Source: Iphione sp. A-MEVVRFRX5 (lineage: Eukaryota). Taken from it: a stretch of DNA of 64,000 bases. This document shows positions 13,233 to 38,600 of the stretch, in pieces; position 1 is the first letter of the stretch, and each line of letters opens with the position of its first letter. Under the pieces are notes generated by a model, which searched no databases, was not told the DNA's origin, and saw only the letters and a program-made list of their open reading frames with translations. Position numbers and translations under genes: made by a program. The stretch is from contig OZ320318.1 in NCBI GenBank assembly GCA_976226885.1, forward strand, positions 81,344,001 through 81,408,000. Reading direction: 5' to 3'.

Positions 13233-13327
13233 CTCCCTCCCTCCCTCCCTCCCTCCCTCCCTCCCTCCCTCCCTCCCTCCCTCCCTCCCTCCCTCCCTCC
13301 CTCCCTCCCTCCCTCCCTCCCTCCCTC
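13233..13327. repeat. (CCCT)n microsatellite (~23 units), homopurine/homopyrimidine mirror repeat
   Basis: Seen directly. Confidence 0.95.
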
Positions 13328-30737: not shown

Positions 30738-30878
30738 NNNNNNNNNNNNNNNNNNNNNNNNNNNNNNNNNNNNNNNNNNNNNNNNNNNNNNNNNNNNNNN
30801 NNNNNNNNNNNNNNNNNNNNNNNNNNNNNNNNNNNNNNNNNNNNNNNNNNNNNNNNNNNNNNNNNNNNNNNNNNNNNN
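30738..30878. other. Assembly gap (N)
   Basis: N run. Confidence 1.
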
Positions 30879-31259
30879 TCCTCTCCATGTCCTCCCTGTC
30901 TCTCGTCTCTGTCTAGACTCTCGGTCCTTACTAGTGCCTTTTGGATCCTGTCATCATTATCTGTAATGCCTCTGTTTCTGAGTGCCTGTTTGTCTCTGTC
31001 ACTTCCCCCCGCTCTGTTGTATTTTCCCGCCTTCTGTTTTACCAAGAGAGAAAAATATGATAAACAATTTAGGGAGAGAATACATCCTGTTTTTAAATGC
31101 AGATAATGAACACGCGATAGATTTAAAGGGTCTTTGAATGTAATGTAGTTCCTGTTCCTTTGAAGTCAACACCCCTAAAAATGTCTGCAGGGTTCAAGTA
31201 GTTCAAGTGGGTCCACATGCATGTACATGTACATGTGTACGCAAATACACCCCCATGTA

Positions 31260-31520
31260 CGCCAAAAGGGGTGAGCCGGGGGGCGAGAGACGCATGTTAC
31301 CATGGACTACAAACAAAAGCAGTCGACATTCGCTAACGACCGTTTGTCAGCGGCGCGCGTCCAGGTACAGTCGCTGAAGGCGCATGAGAGGAGCGCTGTG
31401 ATTGGCTAGAGGCTCGATCGCCTGATGTCGGTCGGCCCCGCCCCTCAACTATGAATACAAACATGTTCTAGCGGCCACGTGGTACAATGGGAGGCGGCGT
31501 GGGGTGACGTGGACGTGTGG
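31260..31520. promoter_or_regulatory. CpG-rich promoter-like region (GC box, CCAAT box, E-box)
   Basis: GTGATTGGCT (~31398), CGGCCCCGCCCC (~31433), CCACGTGG (~31475) and GTGACGTGG (~31504); high CpG density. Confidence 0.5.
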
Positions 31521-32408
31521 GCATGCGTGTGTTTGTGTGTATGTGTGTAATCGGTGCGTACGATCGAACAGGCGTGACGGACTTAAATGTGGGTGTGGTC
31601 TATCCGTCTGTCTCTGTCTCTGTCTCTCTCTTTCTCTCCCCCATCCCTCCCTCCCGGTGTACGCGAGAGTGCGTGCATGGCAGGCAGGACGACGAAATGC
31701 AATATGCCCGCCTAAAAATAGCGCCCTATTAAAGTACACATGCACTCGGCGCGCCCCGGGCTCAGCCTTGTTTAATAAACGTGGGGCTATATAATGATAA
31801 CATTTACCTATCCTTCCAGATATTTATGATAGACCGCTGCTGGCACATTCTATAGACGTGGATAGATACCATCCTTTATAACTCATTAACATTTTCTGTC
31901 CCTCGGTCGAACAGTTGAATCTTCATCATGATCGAGTGTACTAGCGTGTCGTTTTCACCTGTGTTTACAGTGATGATGTCACTGACAGTTTTACCAGACA
32001 AATGAAGAGTATTAGCGTTCAAGCAGTTTAGGAGTCCATACTTCTTTGAATAGCATATGCCACAATCAACGGAAAACGGTCCTCTTGTTGATGGAGCGTT
32101 TTAGACTGACAAGAAACATGGATGCTTCGAAATTAAGGCTCACGGTAATTTCCCATGTGGTTGTAAATGTTAGCCATGTTTTTTTTCTGGAACAGCCCAG
32201 AATCTATGTTTTAGTATGGACCGTGTAGAGCATGGAACATGCTCACATGGAAAGTTTGGCTCGTGTAGTGAGTCTTCGCCAGTTGTCCATAGTGACACTC
32301 AAGCGGGCTGCTGTAGATGTCACTTTCTTGCTTTATATATGAGAAAAAAAAACTATATGAGAAAGTCTGTAACACAACTAACTATATACCTCTTTTATGT
32401 CATTACAG

Positions 32409-32611
32409 GTGTACTCCGAGACATCCGGGCTTACTACAACATCGACCGCTCCAAGGCCGGCCTCCTGCAGACAGCCTTCATCTGCAGTTACATGATCTTT
32501 TCACCCATATTTGGATATCTCGGAGACCGTTACAACCGCAAGTTCATCATGGCCATTGGCATTTTCTGCTGGTCTTCAATCACGTTTATTGGGTCCTTCA
32601 TTCCAGCTGAT
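32409..32611 (+). CDS. SPNS1: SPNS exon (203 nt, phase 1 to 0): [13 protein letters not shown]...[10 protein letters not shown]...SFIPAD
   Basis: Acceptor ttacag|GT at 32408/9 and donor GAT|gtaagt at 32611/2; encodes motif A. Confidence 0.95.
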
Positions 32612-35600
32612 GTAAGTTCAGTTCCAGTGCGTTTTCTTTTCTGTTCTTCCCCCACGCAGCATAGAGATTTGTCACATGATTCAGTGTATGTCAGGTTGTT
32701 TTACACAGTGTGAATTTCTTCATCAAGTCCACCTAAAGCTCTAAACGAACTACAGGTGTGTTTGCTTATCAGCAAATATAGGTCAATCCATGTGTCTTAT
32801 GCTGTCCCCACCACACTTGTCATAATCAGTATGTTACTTGACCTTCAGCAATACTGGCTGTTCTTGGCCATGAGAGCATTGGTCGGTGTCGGTGAGGCGA
32901 GCTACTCCACCATTGTTACTGACTTCTTTAATGTGTCTTATGCTGTCCCCACCACACTGTCTTAACCAGTATGTTACTTGACGTTCAGCAATACTGGCTG
33001 TTCTTGGCCATGAGAGCGTTGGTCGGTGTCGGTGAGGCGAGCTACTCCACCATTGTTACTGACTTCTTTAATGTGTCTTATTGCTGTCCCCACCACACTG
33101 TCTTAACCAGTATGTTACTTGACGTTCAGCAATACTGGCTGTTCTTGGCCATGTGTCGGTGAGGCGAGCTACTCCACCATTGTTACTGACTTCTTTAATG
33201 TGTCTTATTGCTGTCCCCACCACACTGTCTTAACCAGTATCTTACTTGACCTTCAGCAATACTGGCTGTTCTTGGCCATGAGAGCGTTGGTCGGTGTCGG
33301 TGAGGCGAGCTACTCCACCATTGCTCCCACCATCATCGCTGACCTCTTCGTCAAGGACATGAGAACAAAAGCTCTGGCTGTCTTCTACTTCGCCATTCCC
33401 GTCGGAAGGTAAGACGACCCTAATACCCATTACCATACCATTGTATATGTGAAATGACTCCTAAGTAGAGAGCCTTTAGCAAGAAAAACTTCCAAGTGGA
33501 AACCGGACATTTTTTGTTCTTTTGCAAGCTCTCCCTTTTTTAGGCATGACCTTGTTAGAGATGTGTCCGTATGTTCGAGGCTGTCACTCTAATGTCGCTG
33601 CCAGCTGGATATGAAATGGGTTTGATTTTGGTAGAATTAATCCTAAATAATTGCTCATTTTCAGCGGTCTGGGCTACATTATCGGCTCCAACGTTGCGAC
33701 GTTGCTAAATGGTTGGCAGTGGTCTCTCCGAGTAAGTATTGGTTCAGTGGGAGTTTAACGTTTCTGTGTGAGAAACAGTTGGTCAGGCATACCTCTGCAT
33801 GCAGAGTTGACATCTGCTTGAGTGATGGGAATTTGGATGTATGACAGGGTCTTAGATAGGTGCTTGTGGTGGTGTGTCGGCTGGGGTGATCATCGTTACC
33901 ATCTACCGTGGACGGGGACCTGAGAGCAGGCGGGTTCGGGACTGTTGGAAACAGGATTAGGGCGTAATTATTTTAATTATAAAATTGTTAAATTCGAACA
34001 AAGTATGTTAACGTGCATAACTCACTGTTGGATGTGGTTTTAAGATCATCTATTCCTGCAATAAGTCCCTGACATTTGGGCCACCACATATAGTATGGGA
34101 CCTCAAGAATGTGTGACTGATCTGTCAAAACCTTTCAGCTCCTAAACTTTAGTTCGCAGGACTTTAATGTCGGTGTCATACTTCAGGTGTCATACCTCCC
34201 GTACATATCAGTTCTTTCATGTACTCTCTGACTTATGCCGGACCGAACCTTTGACATTTCCAAATTGCCCTCCTATTTAGCATTCCTGGCCTTGCATCAG
34301 TTAGAGTGTAAGCGGGCTACAGGGCCTCCCATCTAGGCAGCAGTGTAGCACGTGTGATGTTCTTTGTCACTGTGTTCTGTTCGGGCTGCAGGTGACGCCA
34401 GCACTCGGGGTGATCTGTGTCCTGTGCATCATCTTCCTGGTCCGGGAACCACCTCGCGGGGCGGCAGAAGGTGGCACCCACCTTGGAAACACCACCGTGA
34501 CAGCCGACCTCAAGTATCTCATGCGAAAGTAAGTGATCCGCTCGCCGAACTGGTCAGAAGGTAGTTGACAAGCAACCACCTCTCCACTTTCAACAACACA
34601 CATGGAATTGTTACAAAATCACAATATGAGCGTGAGCTTTCAAGTCTGTACAGTAGGTCTTCCTAGGCAGAGAACTAGAAAAAGTTCTCCATGAGGTGAC
34701 AGATGCTTTGAATCCTACTCAGATAATTACCCAGTCTCTGAAAGAGGGTAAAATTATTGCCATTGGCAGGTTCTGTGTTCCTGTGCACGTGTACATCAGT
34801 GTACAATCTTTCATTAAGCAACCTCCCATTCAGCCTATTTTATCAGATATTACGTAGATAAAAACAGCTGGCTTCTGACTTGTAACTTGTGATCACTGGT
34901 GCTTTCAGTGAAACCACTCGTTGCTATGACTCGTTCCATTTCAGGTGTCAGAATTCGAAGCATTTCAGTGACATTCAGAAGAATTTTGCAAATACAGAGA
35001 CTATGAATTGGTTTGAAAATATTTAATGTTTTGTTGGAAGATTAGTTCAATTTAACCTGTTTTTTCCTTCCCCAATTCCAGTAAAAGCTTTATGCTGTCG
35101 ACGCTTGGCTTCACGTGTGTGGCCTTTGTGGCTGGAGCGTTGTCCTTCTGGGCGCCGATCTTCATATATGGTTCAGTGCGGGTCCAGGGCGACATCAAGA
35201 CTGAAAATACGTGAGTGTAAACATGCACAAAAACAGACATCTGAATCGAATGTTGTCTATATCCACAAATCAAGGAGTTACATATCAAATTATAGGCACG
35301 TTATTGAGAGGAATACAAAAGCACTTACCCTTGAATGGTTGGTCCAAGAAATACAAATGGCTAGTTGATATACGAAAGACCCTTGATCATCGTTTGGAAA
35401 AATCAATTTATTACGGTATTGAGCCGTCTCCCGCCGTTAAAAGTTAAAGTTAATAACAGCGCTACTCATTCAGAAATCGTAGGTTTGGGGTTACTGAGTG
35501 TAAGATATGGAGTGTTCGTATATGGATACTTATGATTTAATAATGAAAAACAGACGATGTGTGGAAAAACCGACCATCCACTGATGAAAAAAGTATACCC

Positions 35601-38600
35601 TTATTCAGTAGGAAATTTAATTAGTAATATATTCTTACTCTCCTTTTTTAGCCTCATCAGATTCATATATCAGGATAATTGTCTTTACATATGATATACA
35701 TTATCATATTCCCTTTCAGGATTGGCTTATACTTCGGAGTAATCACATGTGCAGCTGGTTTCCTCGGTGTCGGTATCGGCTCAGAGACTGCGCGGCGCCT
35801 GCGGCCCAGGACAATGCGTGCTGACCCGCTTGTGTGTGCCATTGGGCTCATCTCTTCAGCTCCTTTCTTGTTCCTCACGATAGTATTCTCTAAATACAAT
35901 ACAATAGCAACATGGGTGAGTAGTCATAAGGGGAAATAAATGATGATAGTGGTCATGTAAGGATAAATGTCAAATCGATAATACATAATGAAAAGACATC
36001 CTTGAAACTATTTATGTCGACTATCAATGCCCTGATAACTATGCATCAAATATATATGAACCGCTTAGCAAATACCAGTGAATCAGATTCAATGTCTTGG
36101 CATTTATTGGTATATTTTACTCACGTTTTGGAAATATTGCGATGACATTACTTAAAAGGAAAATCCAAGTATTGGTCTATTGCATCCAAGTATTGGTCTA
36201 TTACATTTATTAGTGAAAAAATGTACACATATGGTACCACTACTTTTATTTGTACTGCAGATCCTAATCTTCGTTGGAGAGACACTGCTGTGTTTAAATT
36301 GGGCAATCGTCACAGATATTGTATTGGTAAGAGATTCTTCTTCCAAAAATCTTAGTACTAACAGATTGTAGTGCAAGACGAGTATGCAGAGGCTCTAAAT
36401 CTCCTGCTTCTGTAGTAGTTCTGCCGAATTTTGCAGGGTCTCCTTTTTTCTGTGTTAGACAATCCCATAAAAAAACAAAACTGACAAGAAAACAGAGCAA
36501 AATCTCCCTTTTGGGGCCACCCTGCGGGAAACGATCTGTTCTTTGTACCTCTTCAGCTTGGAGCCTCTGCGCCTAATTCCTACATAGAACTGTAAGCTTA
36601 ATGGCATGGAATGTAACCGAGTGCAATCACATGCTGAGTTATATTCAATAATCCAAGCTACAAAACAAGCCGTGAGAAATTGCATTGTGCTTACAGTAAG
36701 CATTGCTCATACTGATTGGTATTGTGTGCATCTCATTTCAGTATATAGTAATACCAACGCGACGATCCATGGCTGAAGCAGCCCAGATTCTCATATCGCA
36801 TCTCTTCGGGGACGCTGGCAGTCCTTACCTCATTGGTCTGGTACGTCACTTCACTTCTCTACCTCTAGATTGTCTGTAGAAGTGATATTGTTAAGGAGAT
36901 GGTAGGGGGTTTGACAGATTGACAGCTTTCTTGTCAGTGATGGCAGATGGGATTTAGTTTACAGACAACAAAGCGCCCTCTTCATCCCACTTAATTACGA
37001 GATAAAACCACAATTTTGCGATCGGCTTGATGTAAAGATCCAAATGTATAAAGCAGTTATAACAATTATGCGGCTTAAACACGTAACCAGGAGAGAATAC
37101 AACTGCGTAGTTACACTCTTCTTGATACACAGTACACGTACATGTACACAAATTGATTTTTCATTACTTGCACTGGGTAATCGAGACTGGTGACGTTTTT
37201 TACACAGGTTGCAGACACCATCAAAAGTGGCATGACAGACCGGTCGCCGATCGCTGCCGACTTCATCAGTCTGCAGCTTTCGCTCTACATGTGCTGCTTT
37301 GTGTGCGTCATTGGAGGAGCTCTCTTCCTCGCCACTGCTGTCTTTGTAGTGGAGGACCGCGCCCGTGCCGAGAAAGCAATCCGAGGTACGACCGGTGTCC
37401 GCAGTGACAACCATTAACTGCTTGACCGTGAATGACTAATAGCTGAAACACAGGCCTATCCATCTGGACGGTGAAATCACCCTACATTTCTGTTTTAATG
37501 TTAAACTGGCGAAATGTAGCTTTTTAGACAACTTAATGTACACCTGTACACTGTTTAGGCTATCCATGTCAATTGTCTTATTTCCTCAGTTTGTTTTATA
37601 CACCAGCACCGAATTTCTTTCGTTTAATTTGAAAAAGTGGTCCAGAAAAAAATTCTGTTAACATCTTAAGTTGTTTTGGACACATTTATTATAATATTCC
37701 TTATCGTGATGTAAACTTTGTATCTTATTTTCCTTTTTCCCCTCAACAGAGACAAAAGCATACATGCAAAACGGTGAGAATTCCGTTTGGGCTACTTTAA
37801 GTGGGTCATAGTGATAACAGAATGAGGTCATTTCAGTGGCTACTGATAAGGGTGGATAGGTCACCTCTTGCCGCATTCCCCACCCCCCCACCCCCCACCC
37901 CCATCTGCAGGTCCCTTGTGATATGCCTATTAAATACCCTAACCTAGTCCTCACATTCAAACAAAATAGGTAAGGTAAATAGGTAATAGGTAACTTACCC
38001 CATACGACCAGTAGGGTCTGGAGGAAAAGGGTTGCCCCTCTCTGTCCAAAGCTTTGCATGGTAATGCTTCGGCTCCCAGGATTTGGTATACCATCCATGA
38101 GTCCCAGGTGCTTATTTGTGAAGCTGGGGAGGTGTTGTTTCCATGGAGAGGGAATTTATAACCGTAACCGGTCTGTCTGGGGGGTCTGGTGTGGTATTTT
38201 TGTTATCGTCTTTGTTCATAACCTGAATCAAAGCAATTGGTTTCCATATTTTCTGTTCCGTTCTCCTTGTGTTACTCGATAATTTTGTTTTGCCAGGTGA
38301 TTGTGATAACATCTGGAGTTTGTATCGTAACAAAATGCCAATAGCCCAGTGAAATTCACTTTATTAATACACTGGAATTACTATTGACAACATAAAAGAG
38401 ACCTACCAGCTAAAATACCAAGGCGAGGCTCACTGTCCGTAGTGTTCAAAGCCTTAATTAGATTCAAGACTTCAGAAATTATTTAAGTACAAGTTCATTT
38501 ATTTGTTCCTGAGTTCGGCTCAATCTCCATATACCCGGGTTTCTCATCTGTGTTTCAAACGTGGATTCAGATTTTATTTACTCTGATGTGACAAGGTATA

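What the first reader, a model, noticed from the sequence alone, without database searches (positions are those of the whole stretch)
32790..33408. Four stacked copies of one SPNS 3' splice site plus partial exon (acceptor array)
Seen: the intron end (CTTAAC/TAATCAG branch region, ttac-ttgac-ttcag) plus the first 66 nt of the TM4 exon is tandemly repeated. This gives four near-identical acceptors at 32849, 32989, 33130 and 33257. Using acceptor 1, 2 or 3 with the normal donor at 33408 hits premature stops (32963, 33160 and 33160), so only the most distal one yields intact protein. Known: 3' splice-site choice tends to favour the first suitable AG after a branch point, and premature stops trigger NMD. 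Inference: the array may throttle SPNS output as decoy/poison acceptors, may be a copy-number-variable hypomorphic allele, or may need a mechanism to reach the fourth acceptor.
Basis: partly seen in the sequence, partly recalled or inferred. Interest (0 to 1): 0.8.

Follow-up and report, generated by a model that had tools for sequence, protein, structure and literature searches.

The report
Fourfold repeated splice acceptor in spinster
A short stretch spanning the end of an intron and the start of an exon in an invertebrate spinster transporter gene has been copied into four tandem units, so three extra splice acceptors sit ahead of the real one; this is a multi-copy case of a known, usually harmless kind of mutation, and its effect on splicing could not be tested.

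Summary
A 127-141-nt unit (59 nt of intron end plus the exon start) occurs 3.9 times at 32790-33323. This gives four near-identical acceptors at 32849, 32989, 33130 and 33257. Only the last gives an open frame; the other three run into stops at 32963 or 33160.

The gene is a spinster-type MFS transporter. Nine exons give an open frame of 418 codons with canonical splice sites. Five homologous loci from other organisms share the intron position and have a single acceptor, so the array is lineage-specific.

Copy-specific variants in a mosaic pattern argue for real, evolved DNA and against an assembly error.

New here:
- The unit originally reached about 93 nt into the exon.
- Each copy carries a donor-like GTGAGG 43 nt after its acceptor.

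The closest precedent is human CBS 844ins68, a duplicated intron/exon junction in which the distal acceptor is used and the allele is benign. By analogy, and because the gene is intact, the upstream copies most likely behave as intron, with some unproductive use.

No RNA or DNA reads, and no close relative, could be obtained. Acceptor usage, copy-number variation and the proposed throttle function remain untested. The same stretch was noted once more in this scan (s1-349364).

The parts
32409..32611 (+). Upstream exon (TM2-TM3 of the spinster/MFS protein). Its donor, gat|GTAAGT, starts at 32612.
   Evidence: Translation matches SPNS1/SPNS2 chains and Pfam MFS_1 positions 23-81. It is 75% identical to the orthologous exon in L001.
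32612..32789 (+). Unique 5' part of the intron, upstream of the array.
   Evidence: Not part of any repeat copy. Not alignable to other loci.
32790..32930 (+). Copy 1 (141 nt). Intron-end part 32790-32848, decoy acceptor before 32849, exon-like part 32849-32914, tail 32915-32930. The branch-point region is altered (cataatc instead of cttaacc).
32931..33070 (+). Copy 2 (140 nt). Decoy acceptor before 32989. G at -5 interrupts the pyrimidine tract.
33071..33197 (+). Copy 3 (127 nt). Decoy acceptor before 33130. A 14-nt deletion in the exon-like part (between 33152 and 33153). G at -5.
33198..33256 (+). Intron-end part of copy 4. It carries the TTAAC branch-point-like motif (A at -24) and the tract tatcttacttgaccttcag, which belong to the productive acceptor.
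33257..33408 (+). True exon (152 nt, TM4 region). Its donor, aag|GTAAGA, starts at 33409.
   Evidence: The only acceptor that keeps the frame open. Pfam MFS_1 positions 85-133. 90% amino-acid identity to L001.
32892..32897 (+). Donor-like tcg|GTGAGG, 43 nt after decoy acceptor 1. The same motif lies at 33032-33037, 33159-33164 (29 nt after acceptor 3) and 33300-33305 (inside the true exon).
   Evidence: On a rough donor matrix it scores 3.6, against 2.6-6.9 for the gene's eight real donors.
33665..37424 (+). The remaining seven exons of the gene: 33665-33731, 34392-34528, 35082-35210, 35720-35915, 36261-36326, 36742-36840 and 37208 to about 37424.
   Evidence: The joined exons give an open frame of 418 codons with GT-AG introns of 256-660 nt. 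Each exon is collinear with L001 at 67-83% amino-acid identity.

Best explanation
This is a lineage-specific tandem duplication, later amplified to four units, of the junction between an intron and the TM4 exon of a functional spinster (SPNS-type MFS transporter) gene. The original unit held about 59 nt of intron end and about 93 nt of exon. The upstream copy then lost 12 nt and was re-amplified, probably by unequal exchange or slippage, with exchange between copies. Productive mRNA is made by joining donor 32611 to the most distal acceptor, 33257. That is the only acceptor followed by the complete exon and a strong donor, so the three upstream units behave as extra intron: 645 nt instead of about 237. 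Any use of the upstream acceptors, alone or as 43/29-nt micro-exons ending at the internal GTGAGG, gives premature stops and presumably unstable RNA. The array is therefore most likely a tolerated, neutral to mildly costly structural variant of the CBS 844ins68 type, not an evolved regulator. Shown: the array, the frames, the intact gene, and absence from the other loci. Inferred: which acceptor is used and how much is lost.
For: - Repeat structure and acceptors.
- Only acceptor 4 keeps the frame. All single uses of a decoy give a premature stop.
- The gene is otherwise intact: nine exons, 418 open codons, canonical splice sites. Every exon is conserved with L001 at 67-83%. SPNS identity and MFS_1.
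- The copies differ by 0-4 substitutions and 1-3 indel events per 110-124 aligned nt. A gene left unselected for that long would be expected to have picked up frame-breaking changes in its roughly 1250 nt of coding sequence. None is seen (inference).
- Five other homologous loci have the same intron position and one acceptor.
- Copy-specific variants form a mosaic: the T indel is shared by copies 1/2 versus 3/4, and position -5 is C in copies 1/4 versus G in 2/3. This points to real evolutionary history.
- Small signal differences favour copy 4. Copy 1 has an altered branch-point motif, copies 2 and 3 have G at -5, and copy 4 has C at -16.
- Precedent: in CBS 844ins68 the distal of two identical 3' sites is chosen and normal mRNA results (PMC1802585, PMC7277093).
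Against: - There is no RNA evidence at all, so acceptor usage is unknown.
- The gene's introns are short (256-660 nt). If intron definition dominates in this animal, pairing of the donor with the nearest acceptor (copy 1) would be favoured.
- The signal differences between copies are slight: one to three bases each.
- The decoy copies also carry a donor-like GTGAGG, so they could be recognised as micro-exons.
- The G-run element that enforces distal choice in CBS is absent here; there is no GGG in the unit.
- Only one assembly of one individual was seen, so fixation and the true copy number are unknown.
Confidence: 0.6

Rival explanations
1. The array is a working throttle. The three upstream units act as poison acceptors or tandem decoy exons. 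They divert a set fraction of transcripts into premature-stop isoforms, or stall intron removal, and so set spinster dosage. The effect might be regulated or depend on copy number.
For: Each decoy unit has a full 3' splice-site region plus a donor-like GTGAGG 43 nt downstream, which is the layout of a decoy exon (PMC6097662). Decoy use gives premature stops. The 16-nt tail has diverged by 6 transitions while the rest of the unit stays 97-100% alike, which could mean the array has been maintained for a long time.
Against: The array is absent from all five homologous loci examined, so there is no conservation. Copy 3 has a 14-nt deletion and the copies show scattered changes in their splice signals, as expected for drift. 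No expression data exist.
Confidence: 0.15
2. It is a hypomorphic or polymorphic allele. The array is a recent copy-number-variable minisatellite in the sequenced individual or haplotype, and it measurably lowers spinster output.
For: Tandem units of 127-141 nt at 96-100% identity are prone to unequal exchange. The mosaic of shared variants suggests such exchange has happened. Copies 2 and 3 have no substitution differences, which indicates recent amplification.
Against: Copy 1 differs from the others by 3-4 substitutions plus indels, so the array is not brand new. No population data were available.
Confidence: 0.12
3. It is an assembly artefact. The genome really has one unit, and the assembler stacked reads or haplotypes.
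For: Only one assembly was seen, and no reads could be laid on it.
Against: The four units differ at seven variable sites plus a 14-nt deletion, in a mosaic pattern, and they share a derived tail with a 12-nt deletion relative to the exon. Stacking of identical reads would not produce this. The array is only about 530 nt long, well inside a single long read.
Confidence: 0.08
4. Mini-exon inclusion or intron birth, the reading of the scan's other note. The 66-nt exon-like parts are spliced in as in-frame mini-exons separated by 74-75-nt GT-AG spacers, adding 22-residue repeats to the protein.
For: Mini-exons 1 and 2 are 66 nt and in frame. Including one or both keeps the frame open. A real 66-nt exon exists in this gene.
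Against: The proposed donor, att|GTTACT, scores below zero on the donor matrix, against 2.6-6.9 for the real donors. Copy 3 is 52 nt and breaks the frame. The insert would repeat half of transmembrane helix 4 in a conserved MFS core, and no homologue shows such a repeat.
Confidence: 0.03

Closest known systems
Human CBS c.844_845ins68 (844ins68) polymorphism
   Same: A tandem duplication of an intron/exon junction that creates identical 3' splice sites in series. Use of the distal site removes the extra copy and restores normal mRNA, so the allele is common and benign (PMC7277093; PMC1802585, citing Romano et al. 2002; PMC2630376).
   Different: CBS has two sites 68 nt apart; here there are four sites 127-141 nt apart. 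In CBS, G runs between the sites drive distal choice, and no GGG occurs in this unit. This is an invertebrate gene with short introns. Usage here is untested.
[quoted passage not shown] 2011, Lehmann et al. 2010)
   Same: An intragenic tandem duplication whose redundant copy can be spliced out, leaving the protein unchanged (PMC3265369, PMC2891723).
   Different: No new intron position is created. The duplication spans an existing intron end that five other loci share, so it only lengthens that intron.
Decoy exons and poison cassettes in retained introns (Parra et al. 2018)
   Same: Non-coding units inside an intron that have their own acceptor and donor-like site. They can engage the flanking splice sites unproductively (PMC6097662, PMC7373989).
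   Different: Known decoy exons are conserved and lie mostly in introns over 1 kb. These units are lineage-specific copies of the real exon start in a 645-nt intron, and no effect on retention has been shown.
NAGNAG tandem acceptors
   Same: More than one usable AG at one exon start.
   Different: NAGNAG sites are 3 nt apart, share one branch point and change one codon. Here each site has its own branch-point region and the sites are 127-141 nt apart.

Membership tests
Tandem duplication of an intron/exon (3' splice site) junction, CBS 844ins68 type | Direct tandem repeat spanning the 3' end of an intron and the 5' part of the next exon | tested here: met
   TRF period 141, 3.9 copies. The copies align in register with 59 nt of intron plus the exon start.
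Tandem duplication of an intron/exon (3' splice site) junction, CBS 844ins68 type | Each copy keeps the acceptor signals (branch-point-like motif, pyrimidine tract, AG) | tested here: met
   The 25 nt before each AG are nearly identical. TTAAC is present in copies 2-4 and altered in copy 1.
Tandem duplication of an intron/exon (3' splice site) junction, CBS 844ins68 type | Use of the upstream site disrupts the product; use of the distal site restores it | tested here: met
   Frames computed for all paths.
Tandem duplication of an intron/exon (3' splice site) junction, CBS 844ins68 type | The distal site is the one actually used in vivo | not testable with these tools
   No sequencing run was listed for this stretch.
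Tandem duplication of an intron/exon (3' splice site) junction, CBS 844ins68 type | G-run silencer between the sites (specific to the CBS case) | tested here: not met
   No GGG in 32790-33323 (sequence).
Intron gain by tandem duplication (Rogers model) | The duplication lies within coding sequence and creates an intron at a new position | tested here: not met
   The intron position is shared by L001-L006. The proposed new donor GTTACT scores below zero.
Decoy exon (Parra et al. 2018) | Cryptic unit inside an intron with both an acceptor and a donor | tested here: inconclusive
   There is an acceptor plus tcg|GTGAGG 43 nt downstream. The score lies within the range of the real donors, but the matrix is rough and was recalled from memory.
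Decoy exon (Parra et al. 2018) | Conserved between species and promotes intron retention | tested here: not met
   Absent from five homologous loci. Retention is not testable.
Spinster (SPNS) subfamily of MFS transporters | Sequence match to SPNS proteins and the MFS_1 domain | tested here: met
   SPNS1 and SPNS2 chains at E = 1.9e-45 and 1e-44 over 117 residues. MFS_1 is above its cut-off on both exons. The N-terminal TM1 exon was not found.

The most novel reading that the evidence does not exclude
The array is a naturally occurring tandem set of decoy exons or poison acceptors that sets spinster dosage. A copy-number-dependent fraction of transcripts would be lost to nonsense-mediated decay or intron retention, making it a tunable and possibly polymorphic splicing rheostat.
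Probability: 0.15. Interest if true: 0.6.

Novelty: new member of a known kind. Interest (0 to 1): 0.3.

Why it matters
If usage could be measured, the locus would be a natural competition experiment: four almost identical 3' splice sites in series behind one donor. It would show how an invertebrate with introns of 250-650 nt chooses among equal acceptors, by proximity or by exon context. It would also show how much unproductive splicing a conserved transporter gene tolerates. As it stands it is a clean, multi-copy example of a known class of tolerated junction duplications, and it shows how introns can grow by absorbing copies of exon sequence.

Tried and rejected
- **Sequencing runs.** A search for window:32300-37500 listed none, so read laying could not be used.
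- **Metagenome scans.** Exact scans for the copy junction and for the exon start itself both gave 0 matches. The blank for the junction therefore says nothing about polymorphism.
- **Protein word searches.** Two searches, one with the ORF spanning copies 3-4 and one with the exon alone, found no protein more than 90% identical. No conspecific or congeneric sequence was available. None of the first 120 hits contains the GEASYS motif twice.
- **Upstream TM1 exon.** Looked for by motif and by comparison with L001 and not found. It may lie in the N block at 30738-30878, which was left untouched.
- **RNA folding.** Folding of 32600-33420 gave z = -1.8 and no structure that singles out acceptor 4.
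- **Rfam and the minus strand.** Rfam found nothing at 31000-35000. The minus strand shows only short chance ORFs.
- **The 66-nt mini-exon model.** Rejected on donor strength and on the frame of copy 3.
- **Literature.** A phrase search for duplicated 3' splice-site competition found nothing usable.

Full report
**Observation**

The repeat is real in the sequence. Tandem Repeats Finder reports 32790-33323 with period 141, 3.9 copies, 91% matches and score 905. The repeat finder gives four copies in register. The units start at 32790, 32931, 33071 and 33198 and are 141, 140 and 127 nt long, followed by the fourth unit, which continues into the exon.

Each unit holds 59-60 nt of intron end, including a TTAAC branch-point-like motif, a pyrimidine tract and the AG. 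It also holds the exon start, CAATACTGG... The acceptors therefore fall at 32849, 32989, 33130 and 33257. No further copy lies elsewhere in the window, and it is the only long-period, high-scoring tandem array in the 64 kb.

**Frames**

Donor 32611 was joined to each acceptor and read through to the normal donor at 33408.
- Acceptor 1 stops at TAA 32963.
- Acceptors 2 and 3 stop at TGA 33160.
- Acceptor 4 is open.

**The gene**

The two flanking exons match SPNS1 and SPNS2 chains at E = 1.9e-45 and 1e-44. Both score above the Pfam MFS_1 cut-off.

I rebuilt the gene from TM2 to the C-terminus. It has nine exons: 32409-32611, 33257-33408, 33665-33731, 34392-34528, 35082-35210, 35720-35915, 36261-36326, 36742-36840 and 37208 onward. 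All introns are GT-AG and 256-660 nt long. The joined frame is open for 418 codons. The exon that should encode TM1 was not found. It may be under the N block at 30738-30878, which I did not try to fill.

Earlier notes of this scan describe the genome as an invertebrate 'worm'. I did not verify that.

**Comparison with other organisms**

The best database relative is a 1.6-Mb ENA contig (L001). It is collinear exon by exon at 67-83% amino-acid identity. It has one acceptor and one exon start, with no tandem repeat at that place.

Four more loci, from three further samples, show the same intron position and a single copy. Intron sequences do not align between any of these loci. The array is therefore specific to the window's lineage.

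No protein closer than 90% identity exists in the searched collection. No sequencing run was listed. Neither the copy junction nor the exon start occurs in the metagenome collection. Copy number in other individuals and the use of the acceptors therefore could not be examined.

1. **The unit reached further into the exon.** The 16-nt tail of copies 1-3 is GTTACTGACTTCTTTA. It aligns to exon 33335-33350 (ATCGCTGACCTCTTCG) once 12 nt are removed. The purine/pyrimidine pattern is identical at all 16 positions, and all 6 mismatches are transitions. Only 44 of 20,000 shuffles reach this. The original duplication therefore covered about 59 nt of intron and about 93 nt of exon. The upstream copy then lost 12 nt, and that derived copy was amplified.

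2. **The copies carry their own variants.** Copies 2 and 3 have no substitution differences. Copies 2 and 3 each differ from copy 4 by 2 substitutions. Copy 1 differs from the others by 3-4 substitutions. There are also small indels and a 14-nt deletion in copy 3. Shared states form a mosaic that suggests unequal exchange or conversion: the T indel is shared by copies 1/2 versus 3/4, and position -5 is C in copies 1/4 versus G in 2/3. This pattern is hard to reconcile with an assembly artefact.

3. **The tail is far more diverged than the rest of the unit.** The cause is unexplained. Either the first duplication is old and the body of the unit has been homogenised by conversion, or the breakpoint was repaired mutagenically.

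4. **Every copy contains a donor-like site.** It reads tcg|GTGAGG and lies 43 nt after the acceptor (29 nt in copy 3). On a rough donor matrix, recalled from memory and so qualitative only, it scores 3.6. The gene's eight real donors score 2.6-6.9. Each decoy unit thus has the layout of a micro-exon. The GTTACT 'donor' of the scan's other note (s1-349364) scores below zero.

**Splicing paths**

I enumerated the paths through the array.
- Every single use of a decoy, as a long exon or as a micro-exon, gives a premature stop.
- GTGAGG micro-exon 1 or 2 combined with micro-exon 3 (72 nt in total) stays in frame.
- GTTACT mini-exons 1 and/or 2 (66 nt each) also stay in frame.
- These in-frame products would insert a repeated half of transmembrane helix 4 into a conserved MFS core. 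No homologue shows such a repeat.

**Mechanism**

The gene is intact and conserved although the array has existed long enough for its copies to diverge by several substitutions and indels. Productive splicing to 33257 must therefore occur at a sufficient level (inference).

Acceptor 4 is the only one followed by the full exon and a strong donor within 152 nt. It also has the cleanest pyrimidine tract, with C at -16 and -5. Copy 1 has an altered branch-point motif, and copies 2 and 3 have a G at -5. These differences are small and not statistically compelling.

The nearest documented case is CBS 844ins68. It is a duplication of the intron 7/exon 8 junction in which the distal of two identical sites is selected and normal mRNA results (PMC7277093; PMC1802585, citing Romano et al. 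2002). In CBS, G runs between the sites help the choice. This unit has none.

The concept of redundant duplicated sequence being spliced out is that of Rogers and of Hellsten et al. (PMC3265369, PMC2891723). The difference here is that no new intron position arises. The decoy-exon model (PMC6097662) is the known framework for the throttle reading, but known decoy exons are conserved and these units are not.

**Verdict**

The most likely reading (about 0.6) is a tolerated, lineage-specific junction duplication that is absorbed into the intron. The rivals are:
- a dosage throttle (about 0.15);
- a polymorphic hypomorphic allele (about 0.12);
- an assembly artefact (about 0.08);
- mini-exon inclusion (about 0.03).

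It is a new, multi-copy member of a known kind. It is of moderate interest, mainly as a natural test case for acceptor competition once RNA from this species is available.

Noticed in passing
window 30738-30878: An N block of exactly 141 nt lies about 1.5 kb upstream of the first recognisable spinster exon. That is roughly where the missing TM1 exon (the NYMDR-type motif) would be expected.
   Followed up: no
window 33300-33305, compared with L001-L006: The true exon contains a donor-like GTGAGG created by the synonymous codon GGT. The orthologues read GGA or GGG there, except L002/L003, which read GTGAAG. This cryptic donor inside a constitutive exon is evidently tolerated.
   Followed up: partly
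window 32750-32761: An AG|GT-type site, ctacag|GTGTGT, lies 35 nt upstream of the array. Its donor score of 5.6 is higher than that of most real donors of the gene. The pyrimidine tract before it is poor, and its significance is unknown.
   Followed up: no
window 32915-32930, 33055-33070, 33182-33197: The 16-nt tail of the decoy copies differs from its exon source by six transitions and no transversions. Both CpGs read TA. The rest of the unit is 97-100% identical to copy 4. The cause could be conversion of the body or mutagenic breakpoint repair, and is unresolved.
   Followed up: partly
window 23312-23450: A 74-nt tandem repeat (1.9 copies, 82% matches) lies inside a long open frame rich in E, R, K and G on the + strand (23310-23753).
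   Followed up: no
window 13233-13327: A perfect (CTCC)n microsatellite of 23.8 copies.
   Followed up: no
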